DNA from: Octopus sinensis
Lineage: Eukaryota
Length of the DNA: 64,000 nucleotides
Assembly (NCBI RefSeq): GCF_006345805.1
Contig: NC_043023.1
Span: 5,270,001-5,334,000 of the forward strand
Reading direction: 5' to 3'
The notes beneath the pieces were generated by a model. It saw only the letters and a program-made list of their open reading frames with translations. It ran no database searches and was not told the DNA's origin. Every line of letters starts with the position of its first letter. Positions within the stretch are counted from its first letter, which is position 1. Below, in pieces: positions 15,960-62,136 of the stretch. The translations under genes were made by a program, and so were the position numbers.

Positions 15960-18085
15960 TTGAGATGGACTGACTTGTTTCACCATTTTATTGTAAATGG
16001 CTATTTTCTATTTTAAGGGAGTGTGGGAGGTTGGTTTGGGTGGGGAAAGGAAGAACAATTTGGATTTGAAAGGAATTTTTTGTTTCTCTTTCAAGGTTCA
16101 GTGGTTTGGGGGATTGGTCTTTAGAGGTCAGAATGGTGTGAGTGTGTGTGTGTCTGTGTATGTGTGTATATACATGTGTTTGTGCTTGTGTGTGTTTGGG
16201 CCGTTTTTGATTGGTCCCAGGGTTTATTGTGGTGCATGTAAATGTGTCTGTGTGTGTTTAATATTTGGTAGGATGGTGTGTGTATATGTGTGCACGTTTG
16301 TGTGTGTGTGTGATTAATTCGTTAGGGTTTGTGTGTGTGCAAGTGTGTGTATGTGTGTGTTTGTGAGCAATCGTATGTGTGTGTGATTGTCTTGGTGTTG
16401 TGTATGTGTGTGTGACTGTCTTGGTGTTGTGCATGTGTGTGTATTTATGTGCGTGATTAGTATTTGTCATGGTGTTGTGTGTGCGCATGTGTGTGTATAT
16501 GTGCATCTGTATGTGTGTGCGTGTATGTTTGTGTGTTTTTGTGTTAGTGGGGATGTTATGTGAGTGTGTGTGTTGTGTCTGTCTTAGTATGTTTGTGTTT
16601 TAATTGTCCATGTGGTGTGTGTGGATATGAACAACCGTATGTGTGTGTGAGGGTGCATATGTATGTGTGTGGGTATGTATGAATTTGTATATGTGTGTAA
16701 GTGTATTGTATTTATCAGGGGTTCTGTGTGTCCATGTGTGTTGGGTTTATCTGGGTGGTGTGTATGTGTGTGCATATACATTTTGTGTGTGTTGGTATTG
16801 AGTATGCGTTTGTGAGTGTGTGCATATATGTGGGTATGGTTTATGTAGTTTCTGGGTGTGTGTATGTGTGTGTTGCATTTGTGAGTGATTTGTTTTGTTT
16901 GTATTGTTAGTGAAGTGTATGTGTATACGTGTAGGTGTGTTTGTGTGGGTATCTCTATGTGTCTTGTATTTGTCGGAGAGGTGTGTGTCATTGTGTGTGT
17001 GTGCATGTTTGTGTGTATGTATGTTTGTGAGTGTTTGTTGTGATTGTATTGTGCGTGTATGTGTGTTTTTTTTCTTTTGAGTGTGTGTGTGTACAGGTGT
17101 GCATAAATGCGTATGTGTTAGTGTGAGTTGTATTGTAGTTGCATGTTTGTTTATGTATCTGTGTATGTGTGGGTGTGTTTGTGTGAATGTGATTTGTAAT
17201 TTCGGGGTGGTGTGTGTAGGTGTGTGCATGTCTGTGTTCACATATGTGTGTATGTGTGTGTAAGTGTTGGTTATGGTTGCTAGAATCATGTTGCAAGTGT
17301 ATATATGTATGTGCTTTTTTCTTGGGATGTGTGGGTTTGTGCTCTAGTGTGAGGATATTGTGTATGTGCATGTGTTGGAGGTTGGCATTGATTTTGTGTG
17401 TGCGTGATTCTGTATACCTGTATGTGTTTCTGTGTGTGTTTGTTTTGGATGTGTACCTGGGGTGTATGTTAGAGTATGTTGAGTTGTGGTCTATATTTTT
17501 GAATAAGATTATTTTCCCTATTTATTTGTGTTTGGTCAGTGGTGTTGTCCAGGCATTGGTATAGTGGGAAAACTAAGAATTTGGGGGACTTGTTGTGTGC
17601 ACAGAGGTCTAAATGCCCACTAAGTGGTATCTGTCTTGTGGTGGGATCTCTCAGTTGTTGGTGGTGAACTGTTATCCTTTCTCTGAGGGTAAAGCTCGTT
17701 TGCCCTATGTAATCTTTGTGGCACCCTTCACACCTTATGACATAGAGTAAATTTTTTGATGTGCAGGTAAAGTTATTTTTTATGACAAAAGTGTGTCCTG
17801 ACTGGAATTTGTACATTGTTCCTTCAATGTGGTGGATGCAAGTCCTGCAGTTGGAACGACCACATTTTTTGACAGTGGGCGGTGGGTAATTTTGCATTGG
17901 TGAGTAGGTTTTTTAGGGATTTGGGTTGTCTTCATTATTTTATGGGTTGCGAGTACTTTTTTTAGATGTGGGTCGTGATTCAGCTTTGGAATGTTGTTGT
18001 ATATAATTGTGTAAAGAAAAAACACACATACACACACAATACAATCACAACAAACACTCAGAAACATACATACATAGAAGCATTT
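15960..18085 (-). mobile_element. 5'-truncated Penelope-like element: GIY-YIG endonuclease (17469-~18010) + CA-rich 3' repeat + inverted partial repeat copy
   Basis: ORF 17469-17897 has CxxxxCxxC...FTC.SKNLLYVIRC..C...YIGQT...LRER...H...E...I..Y.PQLN. A frameshifted linker lies upstream. 18012-18080 is an inverted copy of ~17010-17078. Confidence 0.85.
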
Positions 18086-42022: not shown

Positions 42023-42094
42023 TCCTCGATAGTATAGTGATAAATATCCCCGCCTGTCATGCGGGAGACCTGGGTTCGATTTCCCACCGGGGAG
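42023..42094 (+). pseudogene. tRNA-Asp(GTC) pseudogene
   Basis: 72-nt match to the metazoan tRNA-Asp cloverleaf with an intact anticodon stem (cccgc/gcggg, loop ctgtcat). The D-loop GG is lost, there are mismatches in the T and acceptor stems, and no T-run terminator follows directly. Confidence 0.8.
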
Positions 42095-43484: not shown

Positions 43485-43584
43485 NNNNNNNNNNNNNNNN
43501 NNNNNNNNNNNNNNNNNNNNNNNNNNNNNNNNNNNNNNNNNNNNNNNNNNNNNNNNNNNNNNNNNNNNNNNNNNNNNNNNNNNN
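43485..43584. other. Assembly gap (100 N)
   Basis: Exactly 100 N, typical of a placeholder for a gap of unknown size. Confidence 1.
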
Positions 43585-46750: not shown

Positions 46751-46907
46751 ACCTACTCAGGTCTCTTCTGTGTGGCTATCAATCCCTACAGACGTCTCCC
46801 CATTTATGGTCAAAACCTTGTTGACAAGTACAGGGGCAAAAGGAAAGCTGAAATGCCTCCCCATTTGTTCTCCGTTGCTGACAATGCCTACCAGTACATG
46901 TTGCAAG
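46751..46907 (+). CDS. Mhc: Muscle myosin II heavy chain exon: [52 protein letters not shown]
   Basis: Acceptor cttcttacag, donor gtaagc, 157 nt (phase 0-1). Clear myosin motor-domain motif. Confidence 0.97.
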
Positions 46908-47952: not shown

Positions 47953-47980
47953 ATCGTGAAAACCAGTCCATGTTGATCAC
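47953..47980 (+). CDS. Mhc: Myosin heavy chain 28-nt micro-exon: (D)RENQSMLI(T)
   Basis: Pyrimidine tract + cacag acceptor, donor gtgagt, phase 1-2. Matches the conserved DRENQS.LIT myosin-II exon. Confidence 0.96.
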
Positions 47981-50123
47981 GTGAGTATTCCCTCTTTGAT
48001 AACATTACCATTCTCAGACAGAACGTTGCATGTTCAATCCACAGGCTTTTATGAAAATCAAATACCCTTCCGCATTTCCGTAAAGTTGGTTTCAAAACTA
48101 TCATAGTAATATTTTTGGCTGCTCCATAGAACCTACCTCATTGCCATTGTGGTAACTATACAGAACATCCTTCACTGGTTCATGTAGTCCCTATTTTACA
48201 AACATTAACAAATTTGTGAATAAGGATCTTTGGCTATTACATGTAGCAAAGTCAACTGACTACACAAGGAGCTTCTCACTGGATCATGTGGTCTCTATCT
48301 TACATACTTCAGGAAGTTTATTGTGCAAGTTTATTTTGCAAGTTTATTGTGCAAGTTCTTCTTCAAAAATGGTTCAAATATAATTGAACTTTCAAATTAC
48401 ACACAGCTTAATTGATTTGTGTGTGAGAGGCAAGTAATAAATACACCAGGCCACCATCTGCATGAAGTAACTTAGTGTTAATATAGTTAATGTAATAAGC
48501 CAGGAAAGTAAGTCAGTATCTTCACACTGATTCAACTATTTGTGCTTTGATACAGAAGTCAAATCCTGTATTTTCTATTATTTTTTATCAATTCAAATAT
48601 TGAGGTTATCTCCCATGAATTAATCATTAAGCTTTTAGCTTACTTTTTATCCTTATTACTGGTGTAGTTTTCTAAATTAGAATTTCTTGGCTCATTACAT
48701 TAATTATGTTCTCACTCATTCAATTATGTTATTACACATAACTCAACATTGTGGATTTGCGGATGGGTAGCTTGCTGAGAAATGGCAGCCAATCAGCTTC
48801 CTGTTTTGTATAATGACCTCTTCTTGTTACAGGTGACATAAGACAAGGGGGAAATGGTATGGTGGTGAGTGACATAATCGGTAGAGTGTCACATCAGGCA
48901 CAAGAACAATGTGCTCTGTTCATTTAGGTCCCTTGAAATCTCAACATGTGTTGTTTGAGATTACAGGGCCAGTGACAAAGTTAGAAATTGATGGATTTGC
49001 AGAATCAGTAGAGCATCCTTCAAAATGCCCTGTGGTATTTATTTTGGGTCTTTGCATCCTCCTGAAGTCAACTTTGCCTTTCATCCTGCCAGGGTTGATG
49101 AAATAAATATCAATCAAAATATCATCAGCAACTGAATCGACCAACCCATTCCAATACATACACAAAAATTAATTTTCTGGCCTATAATTGTACTAATAAG
49201 AATTTCTGGGATTGACAAAATAAAGTACAATGTACTGGAATGGATAGAATAAAATAATTCCATACCTAAAAATTATTATTATTATTTTGTTTAACACAGC
49301 AACTCTGCTGGGGAACGTAACAAAGTGTCACCTGGCCACAACCAGTGGACCAGAGTAACATGCTTCATTCATATTCCAAGAACTCTGCATGGGACTCCAA
49401 CAGTTTCAAGCAACACAACACTGTTTCCTGTAGATGCTCCCTCTTCACATATACCCCTATCTTTCCAACCCAGTATCCAGAGGGGGCAGTATAATTGACT
49501 TCTTTGCCTTTTACCTTCCTGGTGGTCATTTCAAGAAAATAAACTCTACTGATTTATGCACTAGAGAGAAAGGGATCAACGATTCAATCAACGAAATGTC
49601 CTTCTCATCAACTCTTTGTCCATCACCACCACCTACCACAAAAAACTGCTTATGGTAGTCTATGTTGTTACAGATGTTCAGCTGAAAATGTGTCTTTTCC
49701 AGTGCAATGCATGCTAGGAATGCAGCATTGTTACATAGCTGCATTGCTGAGTTGTTGCATATGTTAGCTATCACATGATTGCTTTGGGCTGAAGCAGATG
49801 AAGCAGCGGGTAAAGAAAAAAGAAGCAAAAAACGAAAAAAATATAAATAAAAATAAAATATAATGAAACAATGGTTATGTGATGCTGCATGTTGCAGTCT
49901 GCAAAAAATATTGGACAGGCTTGATCAGTGAGCAATGTGGTTTTCAGATGTTGCAAATGGCTATGATTGGGGTTATAGAATGAAAACAGGGAGCAGAAGC
50001 CTCTATGGCCAGGCACACACACAAATACACTTAGAAACCAGGCATGTGAAAGCATGAATTGAATGATGGAATGAACCATCAAACACTTGAATGAAATATG
50101 TATCCATGAATATACATACCTAC

Positions 50124-53535: not shown

Positions 53536-53568
<33 letters not shown>

Positions 53569-53611: not shown

Positions 53612-53723
53612 TGGAGAATCTGGGGCAGGCAAAACTGAAAGTACCAAGAAAGTGATAATGTATTTTGCCGAAGTTGCTGCCACACAGGAAAAAAAGCGAG
53701 AGAAGGCTGACGGCACAAGAGCT
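53612..53723 (+). CDS. Mhc: Myosin heavy chain alternative P-loop/loop-1 exon A: [37 protein letters not shown]
   Basis: tag acceptor (weak pyrimidine tract), 112 nt, phase 2-0, donor gtaagt. Open frame containing the P-loop. Confidence 0.88.
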
Positions 53724-53850
53724 GTAAGTGTCTTACACATCAGCAATATTTGGCTCTCAAAAATGTGCAATGTTTGTTCTGTGTAGCTTTTTTTAAGGCC
53801 AAATCAATTGTTTTCATCTTGCTAATGTGTGCTTGTATGTCTATATATCT

Positions 53851-53916
<66 letters not shown>

Positions 53917-54073
53917 ATATACGTGGGGAATGGGAAAAATGCCATTATCTGAAAAATTATTTATGTTGAAAAGAAATTTATTTGTGGGAAAAAAGAAAAC
54001 AAAACAGAACAAAAGAAAATAATGAAAATAAAAACTGAAATACAAAGAAAGAAAAGGGAACATTTGCTTATAG

Positions 54074-54115
54074 GCACCCAACATGAGTGCACTGCATCTA
54101 GCAGCAGAAACAGCT
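54074..54115 (+). CDS. Candidate 42-nt in-frame loop-1 micro-exon (APNMSALHLAAETA)
   Basis: ttatag acceptor, 14 open codons, donor GCT|gtaagt, phase 0-0. Upstream tract is purine-rich and no homology was recognised. Confidence 0.3.
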
Positions 54116-54176
54116 GTAAGTCGATGGAGTTTATAATGTAACCATTTTACCTCTGTCATCTCATTTTCTTTTATAT

Positions 54177-54219
<43 letters not shown>

Positions 54220-55807
54220 AATGTGAATATAAAATTAGGTTTGTAAAATCTTAAATGGTAAGCAGAAGTAAACATGAGCTTCTGAAATTTAGAAGCATGT
54301 CACATGAAAAGACAAATGAATGTTTAGGTGATTCACTGTTCCTTTTTTGTCTTTGTCTTTCTATATTTTTCTTTTCATTATTTTATTTTTCATTTTGTTT
54401 TCTCACCAAAAAAAAAAAAAATTGATAACTATTCAATATATATCAAAACCTTTGAAGAACATGTGCTGAATGGGAATTGCTTGTTTAAAAGGTAGTGATG
54501 TTAAATCTATTAATAACAATTGATGGAAAAAGTAAAGTTTGGCAATTACATATAAAAAAGTATACATACATACATATATACAAACAGATCTATAATAGCA
54601 TAAAATACAATTATAATTAAGGGCATAGAGGGTTCCATTCCTGTAGGCATAGAACCCTCTATGCCCTTTTAAGCCTCTATATATGAATTCACCTTAATAG
54701 GTCTCTTTTATATGTTGGTCACTGATAAAATTTTTAGCGATTTTATCCTTTATTATATATACATAAAAAAGGCAGAATTGTGAGCACATGAAGCAAATTG
54801 CTTAATAGTGTTTTACCCATTTTTACATTCTGAATTCAAATTCTACTGTAGTTGGCTTTGCCTTTCACCTTTTTGGGGTTGATAAAATAAGGACCAATTG
54901 AGCAGTTGGGTCGATGTAATTGACTAACCCCAATCCCCAGAATTGCTGGCTTTTTACCCAAAATTTCAAACCAATATGCTAATACACAACAAATGTACAA
55001 ATCTTCATTCAAACTACATATTTCTACCAAGAAAATTCTTCATATCCAAACAATTTCATTATAGATGGTAATGCATATTTATAAAGATGCCTTAATGAAA
55101 AAGCGAACCCTCTTCCATCTTGTTGACAGTTAGAAAAAATAGAAAGACTATTTGATTGTCAAGCAATTTCATATTTGACGCATTTCAGTCTAGCTGTCTC
55201 ACTCTCTTTCTTTCTTTCTTTTTTCCTCTCTCTCTCTCTTTCTATATATACATATATTGGTGTTGATATGAATATTGATGTTATTAATGGTGTATGAAAT
55301 TGTTATTATTATTATTATTGTGGCTGCAAATCTTACAATTATTGTTTTTATTGTTGTAGAAGGAATATTTTGCAACTGTTTATTTTTTTGTCTTTCACAA
55401 AACTATTAATGCCTTACTCTCTCTTCTGCCATGCAACTGTATATATTGTCTCATACATATATATTTCATGAATTCACAACTTAAACTCACAATTTAACTA
55501 CTTAAAAATTCTCATCTCCAAGTATCAAAAGGAAAGAGAAGTGTTAAAATTAAGTAGTGAAAATGTGATTAAGTTGTAAGTAAAATTCATATTCCACAAA
55601 TATTTGTTGTGGTCTCACTTTCTCAATTAACGTGTCACCACTATACATACATATACATATACATATGTGTGCGTATATATCTGACACTCTAATACTCTGT
55701 CACACACAATCAGTTGCAATCACTCACCATCACTCACACATTCTCTCTCTCTTTCTCTCTCTCTCCCTCTTTGTATACACTTTGTACAACCCTCCACATC
55801 ACTACAG

Positions 55808-55919
55808 TGGCGAGTCTGGTGCTGGTAAAACTGAGAACACGAAAAAGGTCATCCAGTACTTTGCCCTCGTTGCTGCTACTCTTGATGGCAAGAAAAAGAA
55901 GGATGATGAAGAGAAGAAG
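55808..55919 (+). CDS. Mhc: Myosin heavy chain alternative P-loop/loop-1 exon B: [37 protein letters not shown]
   Basis: ctacag acceptor, 112 nt, phase 2-0, donor gtagct. Joins the 62029 exon to give [15 protein letters not shown], as recalled for squid muscle myosin. Confidence 0.93.
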
Positions 55920-57386
55920 GTAGCTTTACGGAGCGAAATATTTCAGCATGATGCTCTTGTGTGGTTCCCCCAACTTATTTTCCTACTCAAGATTTTTCCT
56001 ACCTTTCTTTCGATCTACTTTTTATTTTAATATAAACTGTTTTTATATCACATTATGTATCTATGTATGTATGTGCGAATGAAGATTATCTATTTTTATA
56101 TTAATGTTCAACTCTGGATCAATCAACTAGCATCTCTGGAATGACCCTTATGGGCTTTGCATTTGTCTCACTTTTTCAAAAAAGGAGAGACTTTGCCCTT
56201 TTCCTATTTTACATTATTCATCCACACAGATATATATATATATATATATCATTAAATTTCAAATTGATTGAGGTTTCTGTTATGAGAGGCAATTAATATA
56301 ACTTGTTCAACCTCTCTTTTAGTTACCATTAGCTACTATCTATTTTGATAATGCAGAAGGCTTTTCTGAGCAATTTAGTCTTTGAATATTTCTGGAATTT
56401 CACCAACCCTTGTATATAATATTCTGCATATATTTATTGATTTTACTATCAATAATTGAGCTTTTACAGTGAAATCTATGATTCTCTGATGAAGTCCAGA
56501 AAGGCTGAAATATGCCTGGAGTTGTCTCCTATATTTGCTATCAAGGAAAAAAAAGTAGGGAAATCTCTCTCTCAAATTCCCCCCTTACTTTCTTTAATAA
56601 TTGAAGGAGGGATGTGAATATTTAATTTGATGTAATCCTTAAATTTGAAATGGCAAATATTTTAGATTTACATCTTCATTGTCTTTGATATAGGACTGGT
56701 GTGTCATGGGGATGACCTAAGGGTTAAACAACAACAACAGCAACACAACTATGGTGGCAATGTAGATAAATGGGCCCAAATCTTTAGCTAAGGTTTGAAA
56801 TAAGGAATAGGTGGCTGGTTCTAGTCAGTTGGAATCGAAGGGGGAGTAGTTGGCTCGATAGTAGTGGAAGGGAAAAAACAGCCACAAGGGTGATAGTTTG
56901 GTTGTGGGTTTATAGAAAAGGGATTATTATGAGAGGAACAGCCACTCTTGTTTTTTGATGCAGTTGTTGTTATTGCTATTTAGCCCACAGAGATTCACTT
57001 TGATGAATCAGCCCTATATTTAAAGACAATCGAATCATGACCATCTCACCTTATTTATTTTTAAGGCATTGTGTATCCTACACAAGCTATACCATACAGT
57101 TTGTCCCAGTTGTATTAAAAGTCAATGGGGTTATTTGTAGCATATATATATTGTATATACATATATATATTATACTCACATTATATATATATATTATATA
57201 CATGTACATATATATATATATATATATTATGCACACATATATATTAATACATATATTATATATCTATTATACACATATATTATTATCATATATATACATA
57301 TTATATACATATATTATATATATATTATATACATATATTATATATATATTATATATTATATTTATACATATATTATATACCTATAC

Positions 57387-62028: not shown

Positions 62029-62136
62029 AAAGACGAGAAGAAGGGTACCCTTGAGGATCAGATTGTCCAGTGTAACCCCGTACTGGAGGCATATGGTAAT
62101 GCCAAAACTACCCGTAACAACAACTCTTCCCGCTTC
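62029..62136 (+). CDS. Mhc: Myosin heavy chain exon: [36 protein letters not shown] (switch I)
   Basis: ttctag acceptor, 108 nt, phase 0-0, donor gtaagt. Contains the LEDQI..NPVLEA.GNAKT.RN.NSSRF motif. Confidence 0.96.

What the first reader, a model, noticed from the sequence alone, without database searches (positions are those of the whole stretch)
53612..55919. Mutually exclusive duplicated exons swap the myosin P-loop, following helix and loop 1
Seen: two 112-nt, phase 2-0 exons each encode GESGAGKT. Including both or neither shifts the frame, so exclusivity is enforced by frame. Exon A gives ESTKKVIMYFAEVAATQEKKREKADGTRA and exon B gives [29 protein letters not shown]. Established (from recall): molluscan muscle myosin genes make striated and catch/smooth isoforms by alternative splicing around loop 1, which tunes ADP release, and the ESTKKVIMYF type resembles the scallop catch form. 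Inference: this octopus keeps a catch-like variant although cephalopods are not known for catch muscle. Exon A has a weak acceptor preceded by a (CA)n tract, so it may be the regulated minor form.
Basis: partly seen in the sequence, partly recalled or inferred. Interest (0 to 1): 0.72.

Follow-up and report, generated by a model that had tools for sequence, protein, structure and literature searches.

The report
Alternative P-loop exon pair in cephalopod muscle myosin
A cephalopod muscle myosin gene carries two tandem, interchangeable copies of the exon for the ATP-binding P-loop and loop 1, which is an ancient arrangement already described in scallops, snails and water fleas, so the finding is real but of a known kind.

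Summary
On the + strand of a muscle myosin II heavy-chain gene, two 112-nt exons each encode GESGAGKT, the following helix and the first part of loop 1. They lie at 53612-53723 (A) and 55808-55919 (B). Both have AG/GT splice sites and the same phases, 2 then 0. Using both, or neither, breaks the reading frame.

The copies are old. Synonymous sites are saturated (pS 0.90), while the P-loop and helix stay conserved (pN 0.10). Exon A is therefore a maintained coding exon, not a relic.

Exon A carries the "EST" signature of a Placopecten isoform, PDB 2os8. That isoform differs from the striated form in exactly the two exons reported for the scallop catch isoform. Exon B matches squid "MHC isoform A". 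Two unrelated animal contigs show the same order, with the EST-type exon 5' and the ENT-type exon 3'.

This is "MXE cluster-2" of Kollmar & Hatje (2014), described there in scallops, oyster, gastropods and Daphnia. The "catch" reading is over-stretched, because animals without catch muscle keep this cluster. Expression, tissue use and the "minor form" idea could not be tested. It is a new member of a known kind, of modest interest.

The parts
46751..46907 (+). Constitutive myosin head exon ([52 protein letters not shown], ends in phase 1)
   Evidence: 57/62 residues of this exon plus the next are identical to squid S1 3i5f.
47953..47980 (+). 28-nt micro-exon encoding (D)RENQSMLI(T). Its donor CAC|gtgagt leaves two bases of the Thr codon, giving a phase-2 intron. 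It is the common 5' splice partner for exon A or exon B.
   Evidence: A nearly identical micro-exon (27/28 nt) lies upstream of the exon pair in locus L006.
53537..53566 (+). (CA)15 microsatellite 46-75 nt upstream of the exon A acceptor
   Evidence: It is one of 14 (CA)>=6 tracts in the window, and no specific role is shown.
53612..53723 (+). Exon A: the 5' alternative exon of Mhc MXE cluster-2, 'EST' type, resembling the scallop 2os8 catch-pattern isoform. It encodes the P-loop, the following helix and the first 13 residues of loop 1. It has a pyrimidine-poor acceptor and a consensus GTAAGT donor.
53724..55807 (+). 2084-nt intron between the two alternative exons. It is far too long for steric exclusion. 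It contains (TA)n tracts and a 17-bp-stem hairpin at 54619-54668.
55808..55919 (+). Exon B: the 3' alternative exon of cluster-2, 'ENT' type, matching squid 'MHC isoform A' (3i5f). It has a C/T-rich upstream tract and a weak GTAGCT donor.
62029..62136 (+). Next exon ([36 protein letters not shown]), covering the end of loop 1 to switch-1. This is the position of MXE cluster-3 in other molluscs. Only one copy lies inside the window, which ends 1.9 kb further on.
   Evidence: 36/36 residues are identical to squid 3i5f.

Best explanation
The window holds part of the single striated-type muscle myosin II heavy-chain gene of a coleoid cephalopod.

Exons A and B are the two members of the ancient mutually exclusive exon cluster that encodes the P-loop, the helix after it and the N-terminal half of loop 1. 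This is 'MXE cluster-2' in the nomenclature of Kollmar & Hatje.

One of the two exons is spliced between the 28-nt micro-exon (47953-47980) and the exon at 62029. Each is 112 nt (3n+1), so double inclusion or double skipping shifts the frame. Such transcripts would be non-productive and presumably removed by nonsense-mediated decay (inferred).

The choice replaces Asn by Ser two residues after the P-loop Thr. It also changes two helix residues (Q/M and L/E) and rewrites 13 loop-1 residues without changing loop length. By analogy with scallop isoforms and loop-1 swap experiments, this should change ADP affinity and release, and so ATPase rate and shortening speed (inferred).

Exon B is the generic form, identical in type to the squid myosin that was crystallised. 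Exon A is the counterpart of the 5' exon (2a) that Kollmar & Hatje assign to the scallop catch isoform. It most likely gives a slower, more tonic motor in a subset of cells or at low level (inferred).

Exon choice is probably set by splice-site strength plus trans-acting factors. A has a poor acceptor and a perfect donor, while B has a good acceptor and a poor donor (inferred, not shown).
For: 1. Gene identity. Pfam Myosin_head scores E = 1e-60. The best PDB relatives are squid and scallop muscle S1.
2. Anatomy and frame logic.
3. Long-term purifying selection on both copies. In the 24 P-loop and helix codons there are 15.5 synonymous against 5.5 non-synonymous differences (pS 0.90, pN 0.10). 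A dead exon would not keep this pattern.
4. Paralogue types. All six 5'/2os8-type exons have Ser at position 10 and all six 3'/striated-type exons have Asn. Exon A is 22/24 identical to 2os8. Exon B is 23/24 identical to squid 3i5f.
5. Conserved order. The EST-type exon is 5' of the ENT-type exon, with the same intron phases, in L001 and in L006, which also has the micro-exon.
6. 2os8 differs from striated scallop myosin in this exon and the next one. This matches the published catch combination 2a,3b.
7. The literature describes cluster-2 as P-loop, helix and loop-1, alternatively spliced in scallops and present in Crassostrea, Aplysia, Biomphalaria, Lottia and Daphnia. It also reports that loop 1 affects ADP release (PMC3912159).
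8. Splice-site asymmetry. All five EST-type exons have a GTAAGT donor. The ENT-type donors are GTAGCT, GTAGAC and GTTGTC.
Against: No transcript evidence could be obtained. The protein collections hold no sequence from this animal: the best hit to the spliced A form was 72-75% identical, and an exon-A-only query found a single foreign fragment.

Orthology of A with the scallop exon rests on one fully diagnostic residue plus gene order.

Kollmar & Hatje read the published squid isoforms A and B as differing in the next exon (cluster-3), not in this one. Use of a cluster-2a exon in a cephalopod is therefore not documented in the papers I could read.

Shaffer & Kier, as summarised in PMC4757648, found all cephalopod MHC isoforms in all muscles sampled. 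That argues against sharp tissue specificity.

Loop-1 length is the same in A and B, so the simple rule that a longer loop gives faster ADP release does not predict which form is slower.

That 2os8 is the catch-muscle protein is my recollection plus the 2a/3b pattern. No tool output states it.
Confidence: 0.8

Rival explanations
1. Exon A is a silent relic. It would be an old tandem duplicate that cephalopods no longer splice in, with only exon B used.
For: Exon A has the weakest acceptor of the five in the window (py 0.45). Squid muscle myosin that was purified and crystallised carries the B type. Squid isoform A makes up 90-95% of transcripts. No cephalopod transcript with an EST-type exon was found in the databases or papers reachable here.
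Against: The frame is open, with intact AG and a perfect GTAAGT donor. The P-loop is invariant and the helix nearly so, despite saturated synonymous change. The lineage-wide EST signature is retained. Loss of use would have to be very recent to leave no trace. An equally pyrimidine-poor acceptor (0.45) occurs in the L001 5' exon.
Confidence: 0.1
2. Both exons are used, but the choice is not tissue-regulated. A is a constant low-level by-product in every muscle, and contractile speed is tuned by ultrastructure, which is the Kier/Shaffer view.
For: The review PMC4757648 reports that all three squid, four cuttlefish and six Octopus bimaculoides MHC isoforms were found in every muscle sampled. It also reports that the minor squid isoform did not differ between arm and tentacle.
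Against: Those studies sampled bulk locomotor and buccal muscle. They did not sample smooth-like tissues such as the skin papillae core, vessels or viscera. Smooth muscle with catch-like holding is reported in cuttlefish papillae. Strong purifying selection on a distinct paralogue over a very long time is easier to explain if it has its own role. In scallops the corresponding exons are muscle-type specific.
Confidence: 0.3
3. Exclusivity is enforced by competing intronic RNA pairing, in the docking-site and selector style of Dscam, 14-3-3xi and Drosophila Mhc, rather than only by frame and decay.
For: A TG-rich element about 435 nt downstream of the micro-exon (48413-48429, TGATTTGTGTGTGAGAG) is complementary to the (CA)15 tract upstream of A. 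It is also complementary to CTGTCACACACAATCA about 100 nt upstream of B.
Against: These matches are low-complexity and not significant (E 0.3-4). TG/CA decamers occur 507 times in the window. Inverted repeats in the introns are dominated by (TA)n. No orthologous cephalopod intron sequence was available to test conservation or covariation.
Confidence: 0.05

Closest known systems
Mhc MXE cluster-2 of protostome muscle myosin heavy-chain genes (Kollmar & Hatje 2014, PMC3912159). [quoted passage not shown]
   Same: It is the same gene family and covers the same protein segment: P-loop, following helix and loop 1. It consists of tandem homologous exons. The 5' exon is of the type the paper assigns to the scallop catch isoform, and the 3' exon is of the generic/striated type. 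Intron phases and the upstream micro-exon are shared with the related loci L001 and L006.
   Different: Here the two exons are equal in length (112 nt), so loop-1 length does not change. In relatives the EST-type exon ranges from 103 to 136 nt. The neighbouring cluster-3 exon is single within the window, whereas L001 has three copies. A cephalopod example of cluster-2 is not described in the papers I could read.
Squid (Doryteuthis pealeii) MHC isoforms A, B and C (Matulef 1998; Shaffer & Kier 2012, as summarised in PMC4757648 and PMC3912159)
   Same: Both are cephalopod muscle MHCs from one gene, with alternative splicing that alters loop 1 near the ATP site. Exon B here is the counterpart of the squid isoform A sequence in PDB 3i5f, with 23/24 identity in the P-loop and helix and the same loop length.
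   Different: According to Kollmar & Hatje, the squid A/B difference lies in the next exon (cluster-3), not in the P-loop exon. An EST-type exon has not been reported for squid in what I could read.
Drosophila Mhc alternative exon sets (exons 3, 7, 9, 11, 15)
   Same: A single muscle myosin gene is diversified by mutually exclusive tandem exons in the motor domain.
   Different: The paper's Drosophila account describes other motor-domain clusters; among arthropods it reports cluster-2 only in Daphnia. No evidence was found here for the intronic RNA pairing that I recall being proposed for insect MXE clusters.

Membership tests
Mhc MXE cluster-2 (P-loop / helix / loop-1 alternative exons) | The host gene is a striated-type muscle myosin II heavy chain | tested here: met
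   Pfam Myosin_head scores E = 1e-60. The top PDB matches are squid and scallop muscle S1, at E = 1e-73 to 1e-80.
Mhc MXE cluster-2 (P-loop / helix / loop-1 alternative exons) | The exon begins one base before the Gly codon of GESGAGKT (phase-2 intron) and ends inside loop 1 (phase 0) | tested here: met
   The same boundaries are seen in L001, L006, L007 and L008.
Mhc MXE cluster-2 (P-loop / helix / loop-1 alternative exons) | Two or more tandem homologous exons with the same phases, canonical splice sites and open frames | tested here: met
   A and B are both 112 nt with AG...GT. They share 25/38 aa and are the only two copies in the window.
Mhc MXE cluster-2 (P-loop / helix / loop-1 alternative exons) | Exactly one exon of the cluster is present in mature mRNA | not testable with these tools
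   No transcript data for this animal could be reached. Frame logic shows that only single inclusion keeps the reading frame.
Scallop catch-type exon 2a (orthology of exon A) | It is the 5' member of the pair and shares sequence signatures with the catch isoform | tested here: met
   Exon A is the 5' exon. It is 22/24 identical to Placopecten 2os8 and has the Ser-for-Asn signature shared by all six 5'-type exons. The signal is thin, with one fully diagnostic site.
Catch / smooth-muscle myosin isoform (functional class) | It is co-spliced with the 3b and 11b exons and expressed in catch or smooth muscle | not testable with these tools
   The only cluster-3 exon in the window is of the 3a-like type, with EAY and KTTR. 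Any 3b copy, the rod hinge exons and all expression data lie outside the window.
Catch / smooth-muscle myosin isoform (functional class) | It has lower ATPase and higher ADP affinity than the alternative form | not testable with these tools
   This needs expressed S1 and transient kinetics. Loop length is equal in A and B, so sequence alone does not predict the direction.
MXE enforced by steric hindrance (intron too short for two spliceosomes) | The intron between the alternative exons is shorter than roughly 60-80 nt | tested here: not met
   The intron is 2084 nt.
MXE enforced by U2/U12 spliceosome incompatibility | One flanking intron has U12-type splice sites (donor /RTATCCTT) | tested here: not met
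   The donors are GTGAGT, GTAAGT and GTAGCT, and all acceptors are AG with U2-type context.
MXE controlled by competing RNA secondary structure (docking site and selectors) | A unique intronic docking site is complementary to a selector next to each variant exon and conserved in relatives | tested here: inconclusive
   Only low-complexity TG/CA complementarity was found, and it is not significant. No orthologous introns were available.

The most novel reading that the evidence does not exclude
Cephalopods may deploy the EST-type (scallop catch-pattern) P-loop/loop-1 exon specifically in smooth-like, tone-holding muscle cells that bulk-muscle cDNA surveys did not sample. Candidates are the skin papillae core, sucker or vessel and visceral muscle. 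Exon A junction reads would then be a molecular marker of such cells. They would also give a handle on the catch-like holding reported in cuttlefish papillae.
Probability: 0.25. Interest if true: 0.5.

Novelty: new member of a known kind. Interest (0 to 1): 0.3.

Why it matters
The finding shows that a coleoid cephalopod retains, under selection, both members of an exon pair that predates the bivalve-cephalopod split. One member is of the type reported for scallop catch-muscle myosin. This bears on an open argument in cephalopod muscle biology: whether contraction speed and tone are tuned only by ultrastructure, or also by myosin isoforms.

It also gives exact junctions to count in RNA-seq: 47980>53612 and 53723>62029, against 47980>55808 and 55919>62029. 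Otherwise the finding is confirmatory. The exon cluster, its position in the motor and its likely kinetic role were described in other molluscs from 1994 to 2014.

Tried and rejected
1. Finding transcripts or orthologues from cephalopods.
- A spliced A-form query against the 5.8-billion-protein collection gave only fragments from other animals at 75% identity or less. None of the top 120 was EST-type.
- An exon-A-only query found one foreign fragment.
- Exact look-ups of the window's own ORFs found nothing.
- Species identity and expression therefore stay untested.

2. Primary cephalopod isoform papers. PMC3244340 and PMC4795958, and my guessed PMC id for the 1994 scallop paper, are not held. 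I relied on two secondary accounts.

3. Intronic RNA pairing. Inverted-repeat output is swamped by (TA)n. Targeted complement searches gave only TG/CA low-complexity matches. This is rejected as evidence.

4. The (CA)n tract as a regulatory signal. It is a common microsatellite here, so I give it no weight.

5. A third copy of the P-loop exon, or a second copy of the next exon, inside the window. None was found.

6. N-terminal myosin exons upstream. None was found in 1-46750 on either strand. The preceding intron exceeds 46 kb or is interrupted by the N gap.

7. "VIMY" as a catch marker. This is rejected because striated scallop myosin has it too.

8. Confirming from the literature that 2os8 is the catch protein. 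No held paper links the two terms. The assignment rests on the 2a+3b pattern and on my recollection.

Full report
**Observation**

The + strand between 46.7 kb and 62.1 kb carries five exons of a myosin head:
- 46751-46907 encodes TYSGLF...AYQYMLQ.
- 47953-47980 is a 28-nt micro-exon encoding DRENQSMLI-T.
- Exon A is 53612-53723.
- Exon B is 55808-55919.
- 62029-62136 encodes [36 protein letters not shown].

A and B are each 112 nt. Each starts with the third base of a Thr codon followed by GESGAGKT, and each ends on a codon boundary. Both have AG acceptors and GT donors.

Joining the micro-exon to A or to B and then to 62029 gives an uninterrupted myosin sequence. A plus B gives stop codons ten codons into B. 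Skipping both shifts the frame of the next exon.

The two exons share 70/112 nt and 25/38 aa. tblastn finds only these two copies in the 64 kb.

**What the gene is**

The spliced peptide is a Myosin_head domain (E = 1e-60). Its closest solved relatives are squid (Doryteuthis pealeii) muscle S1 3i5f, then scallop S1.

The shared exons differ from squid at 5 of 62 residues upstream and 0 of 36 downstream. The animal is therefore a coleoid cephalopod other than that squid. Whether it is an octopus could not be checked. The protein collections hold nothing from this genome.

No N-terminal myosin exon is present in the 46.7 kb upstream on either strand. The preceding intron is therefore very long, or it is interrupted by the N gap at 43485-43584.

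**Is exon A a living exon?**

Between A and B, the 24 codons for the P-loop and helix carry 15.5 synonymous and 5.5 non-synonymous differences (pS 0.90, pN 0.10). Synonymous sites are saturated, yet the P-loop is invariant and the helix nearly so. The 13 loop-1 codons are free to vary (pN 0.49).

This is the pattern of two old paralogues, each held by protein-level selection. It is not the pattern of a decaying duplicate.

**Which paralogue is which?**

Queried alone, exon A's best PDB match is Placopecten 2os8 ([25 protein letters not shown]...), identical over the first 20 residues.

2os8 differs from striated scallop myosin (2ec6, 1b7t) in this exon and also in the next one. It has [23 protein letters not shown] where the striated form has [23 protein letters not shown]. 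That is the "2a,3b" combination Kollmar & Hatje give for the catch isoform, against "2b,3a" for the striated form. That 2os8 is the catch-muscle protein is also my recollection of the PDB entry. No tool states it.

Exon B is 23/24 identical to squid "MHC isoform A", with the same loop length.

An exhaustive HMMER search with exon A found four more EST-type exons among short genomic fragments from unidentified animals. Two of their contigs are informative:
- L001 has an EST-type exon, 377 nt of intron and an ENT-type exon. Three copies of the next exon and then the GKFIRIHFG exon follow.
- L006 has the same 28-nt micro-exon (27/28 nt identical), then an EST-type exon, then an ENT-type exon 3.3 kb later.

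Across twelve exons, Ser versus Asn two residues after the P-loop Thr separates the 5'/2os8 type from the 3'/striated type perfectly.

Exon A is therefore best read as the cephalopod counterpart of molluscan exon 2a, and exon B as exon 2b. The sequence signal is thin, with one diagnostic site, but gene order agrees in all three loci.

**Known context**

[quoted passage not shown] They report the following:
- It is an alternative exon in Argopecten and Placopecten.
- It occurs as genomic MXEs in Crassostrea Mhc2, Aplysia, Biomphalaria, Lottia Mhc6 and Daphnia.
- It dates to the protostome ancestor.
- Loop 1 influences ADP release and sliding velocity.

For cephalopods, alternative splicing near the ATP-binding loop is known from squid. 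Isoform A makes up 90-95% of transcripts. Six MHC isoforms were reported in Octopus bimaculoides, all present in all muscles sampled (PMC4757648).

Kollmar & Hatje assign the squid A/B difference to the next exon, cluster-3. A cluster-2 pair in a cephalopod is thus not explicit in the papers I could read. The primary papers were not available, and genome annotations may well already list both forms.

**Mechanism**

What is shown is that only single inclusion preserves the frame. Several enforcement mechanisms were checked:
- Steric exclusion is excluded, because the intron between A and B is 2084 nt.
- A U12-type intron is excluded by the splice-site sequences.
- RNA docking-and-selector pairing is unsupported. 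Only TG/CA low-complexity complementarity was found, in a window with 507 such decamers.

The most likely scheme, which is inferred, is regulated choice with non-productive products removed by nonsense-mediated decay.

Splice sites are asymmetric. A has the poorest pyrimidine tract of the five acceptors (0.45) but a consensus GTAAGT donor. B has a C/T-rich upstream tract and a weak GTAGCT donor. The donor asymmetry recurs in relatives: all five EST-type exons have GTAAGT, while the ENT-type exons have GTAGCT, GTAGAC and GTTGTC. The weak acceptor recurs in only one of the four related EST-type exons.

The (CA)15 tract is one of 14 in the window, and 2.6% of positions have one within 100 nt upstream. 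It carries little weight.

**Protein consequence (inferred)**

The exon choice makes these changes:
- N to S next to the P-loop.
- Q to M and L to E in the helix.
- A loop-1 segment of equal length but different make-up. A is QEKKREKADGTRA, with 8 of 13 residues charged. B is [13 protein letters not shown], with 11 of 13 charged.

By analogy with scallop S1 isoforms, this should shift ADP affinity and ATPase. The direction cannot be read from the sequence.

**The "catch" inference**

Retaining the exon type is real, but it does not imply catch muscle. Animals without catch muscle keep cluster-2. The catch state is attributed to twitchin rather than to cross-bridge cycling.

The same paper does report smooth muscle with catch-like holding in cuttlefish skin papillae. 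That tissue was not covered by the bulk-muscle isoform surveys, so a specialised use of exon A remains possible but is untested.

**Verdict**

This is a genuine, correctly described pair of alternative P-loop/loop-1 exons. It is a new cephalopod member of a well-described, ancient exon cluster. Interest is modest, and the useful output is a precise set of junctions to count.

Noticed in passing
window 42023-42094 (+): A tRNA-Asp (GTC) gene or tRNA-derived element lies inside the long intron upstream of the myosin exons. Rfam scores it at 37 bits and ARAGORN agrees.
   Followed up: no
window 17469-17897 (-): A 142-aa ORF has a GIY-YIG nuclease domain (Pfam E = 1e-6). It is probably a fragment of a Penelope-like or other mobile element in the intron.
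   Followed up: partly
window 54619-54668 (+): A 17-bp-stem hairpin (AGGGCATAGAGGGTTC...GAACCCTCTATGCCCT) sits in the intron between exons A and B. Its energy is -33.6 kcal/mol with z = -5.2. The arm is not repeated elsewhere in the window, and there is no Rfam match.
   Followed up: partly
window 1-46750 and 43485-43584: No N-terminal myosin exon was found in the 46.7 kb upstream on either strand. A 100-N assembly gap lies at 43485-43584.
   Followed up: partly
window, whole: Microsatellite load is very high. There are 91 (TA)>=6 tracts covering 3% of the window, plus 14 (CA) and 17 (TG) tracts. They dominate every repeat and inverted-repeat search.
   Followed up: yes
L001 1820-3963: In an unidentified animal (Logan SRR34434942), the exon after the P-loop pair is present in three tandem copies: [48 protein letters not shown] and [24 protein letters not shown]. 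The third resembles the exon used in Placopecten 2os8.
   Followed up: partly
P0122, P0123 (protein-representative hits): These are genomic ORFs from other, unidentified animals that read straight through two tandem ENT-type P-loop exons. They show further instances of duplicated P-loop exons with short intervening introns.
   Followed up: no
window 53724-53729 / 55920-55925; L001, L006, L007, L008: All five EST-type exons end with a consensus GTAAGT donor. The three ENT-type exons have weak donors: GTAGCT, GTAGAC and GTTGTC. This may be a conserved feature of how the pair is regulated.
   Followed up: partly
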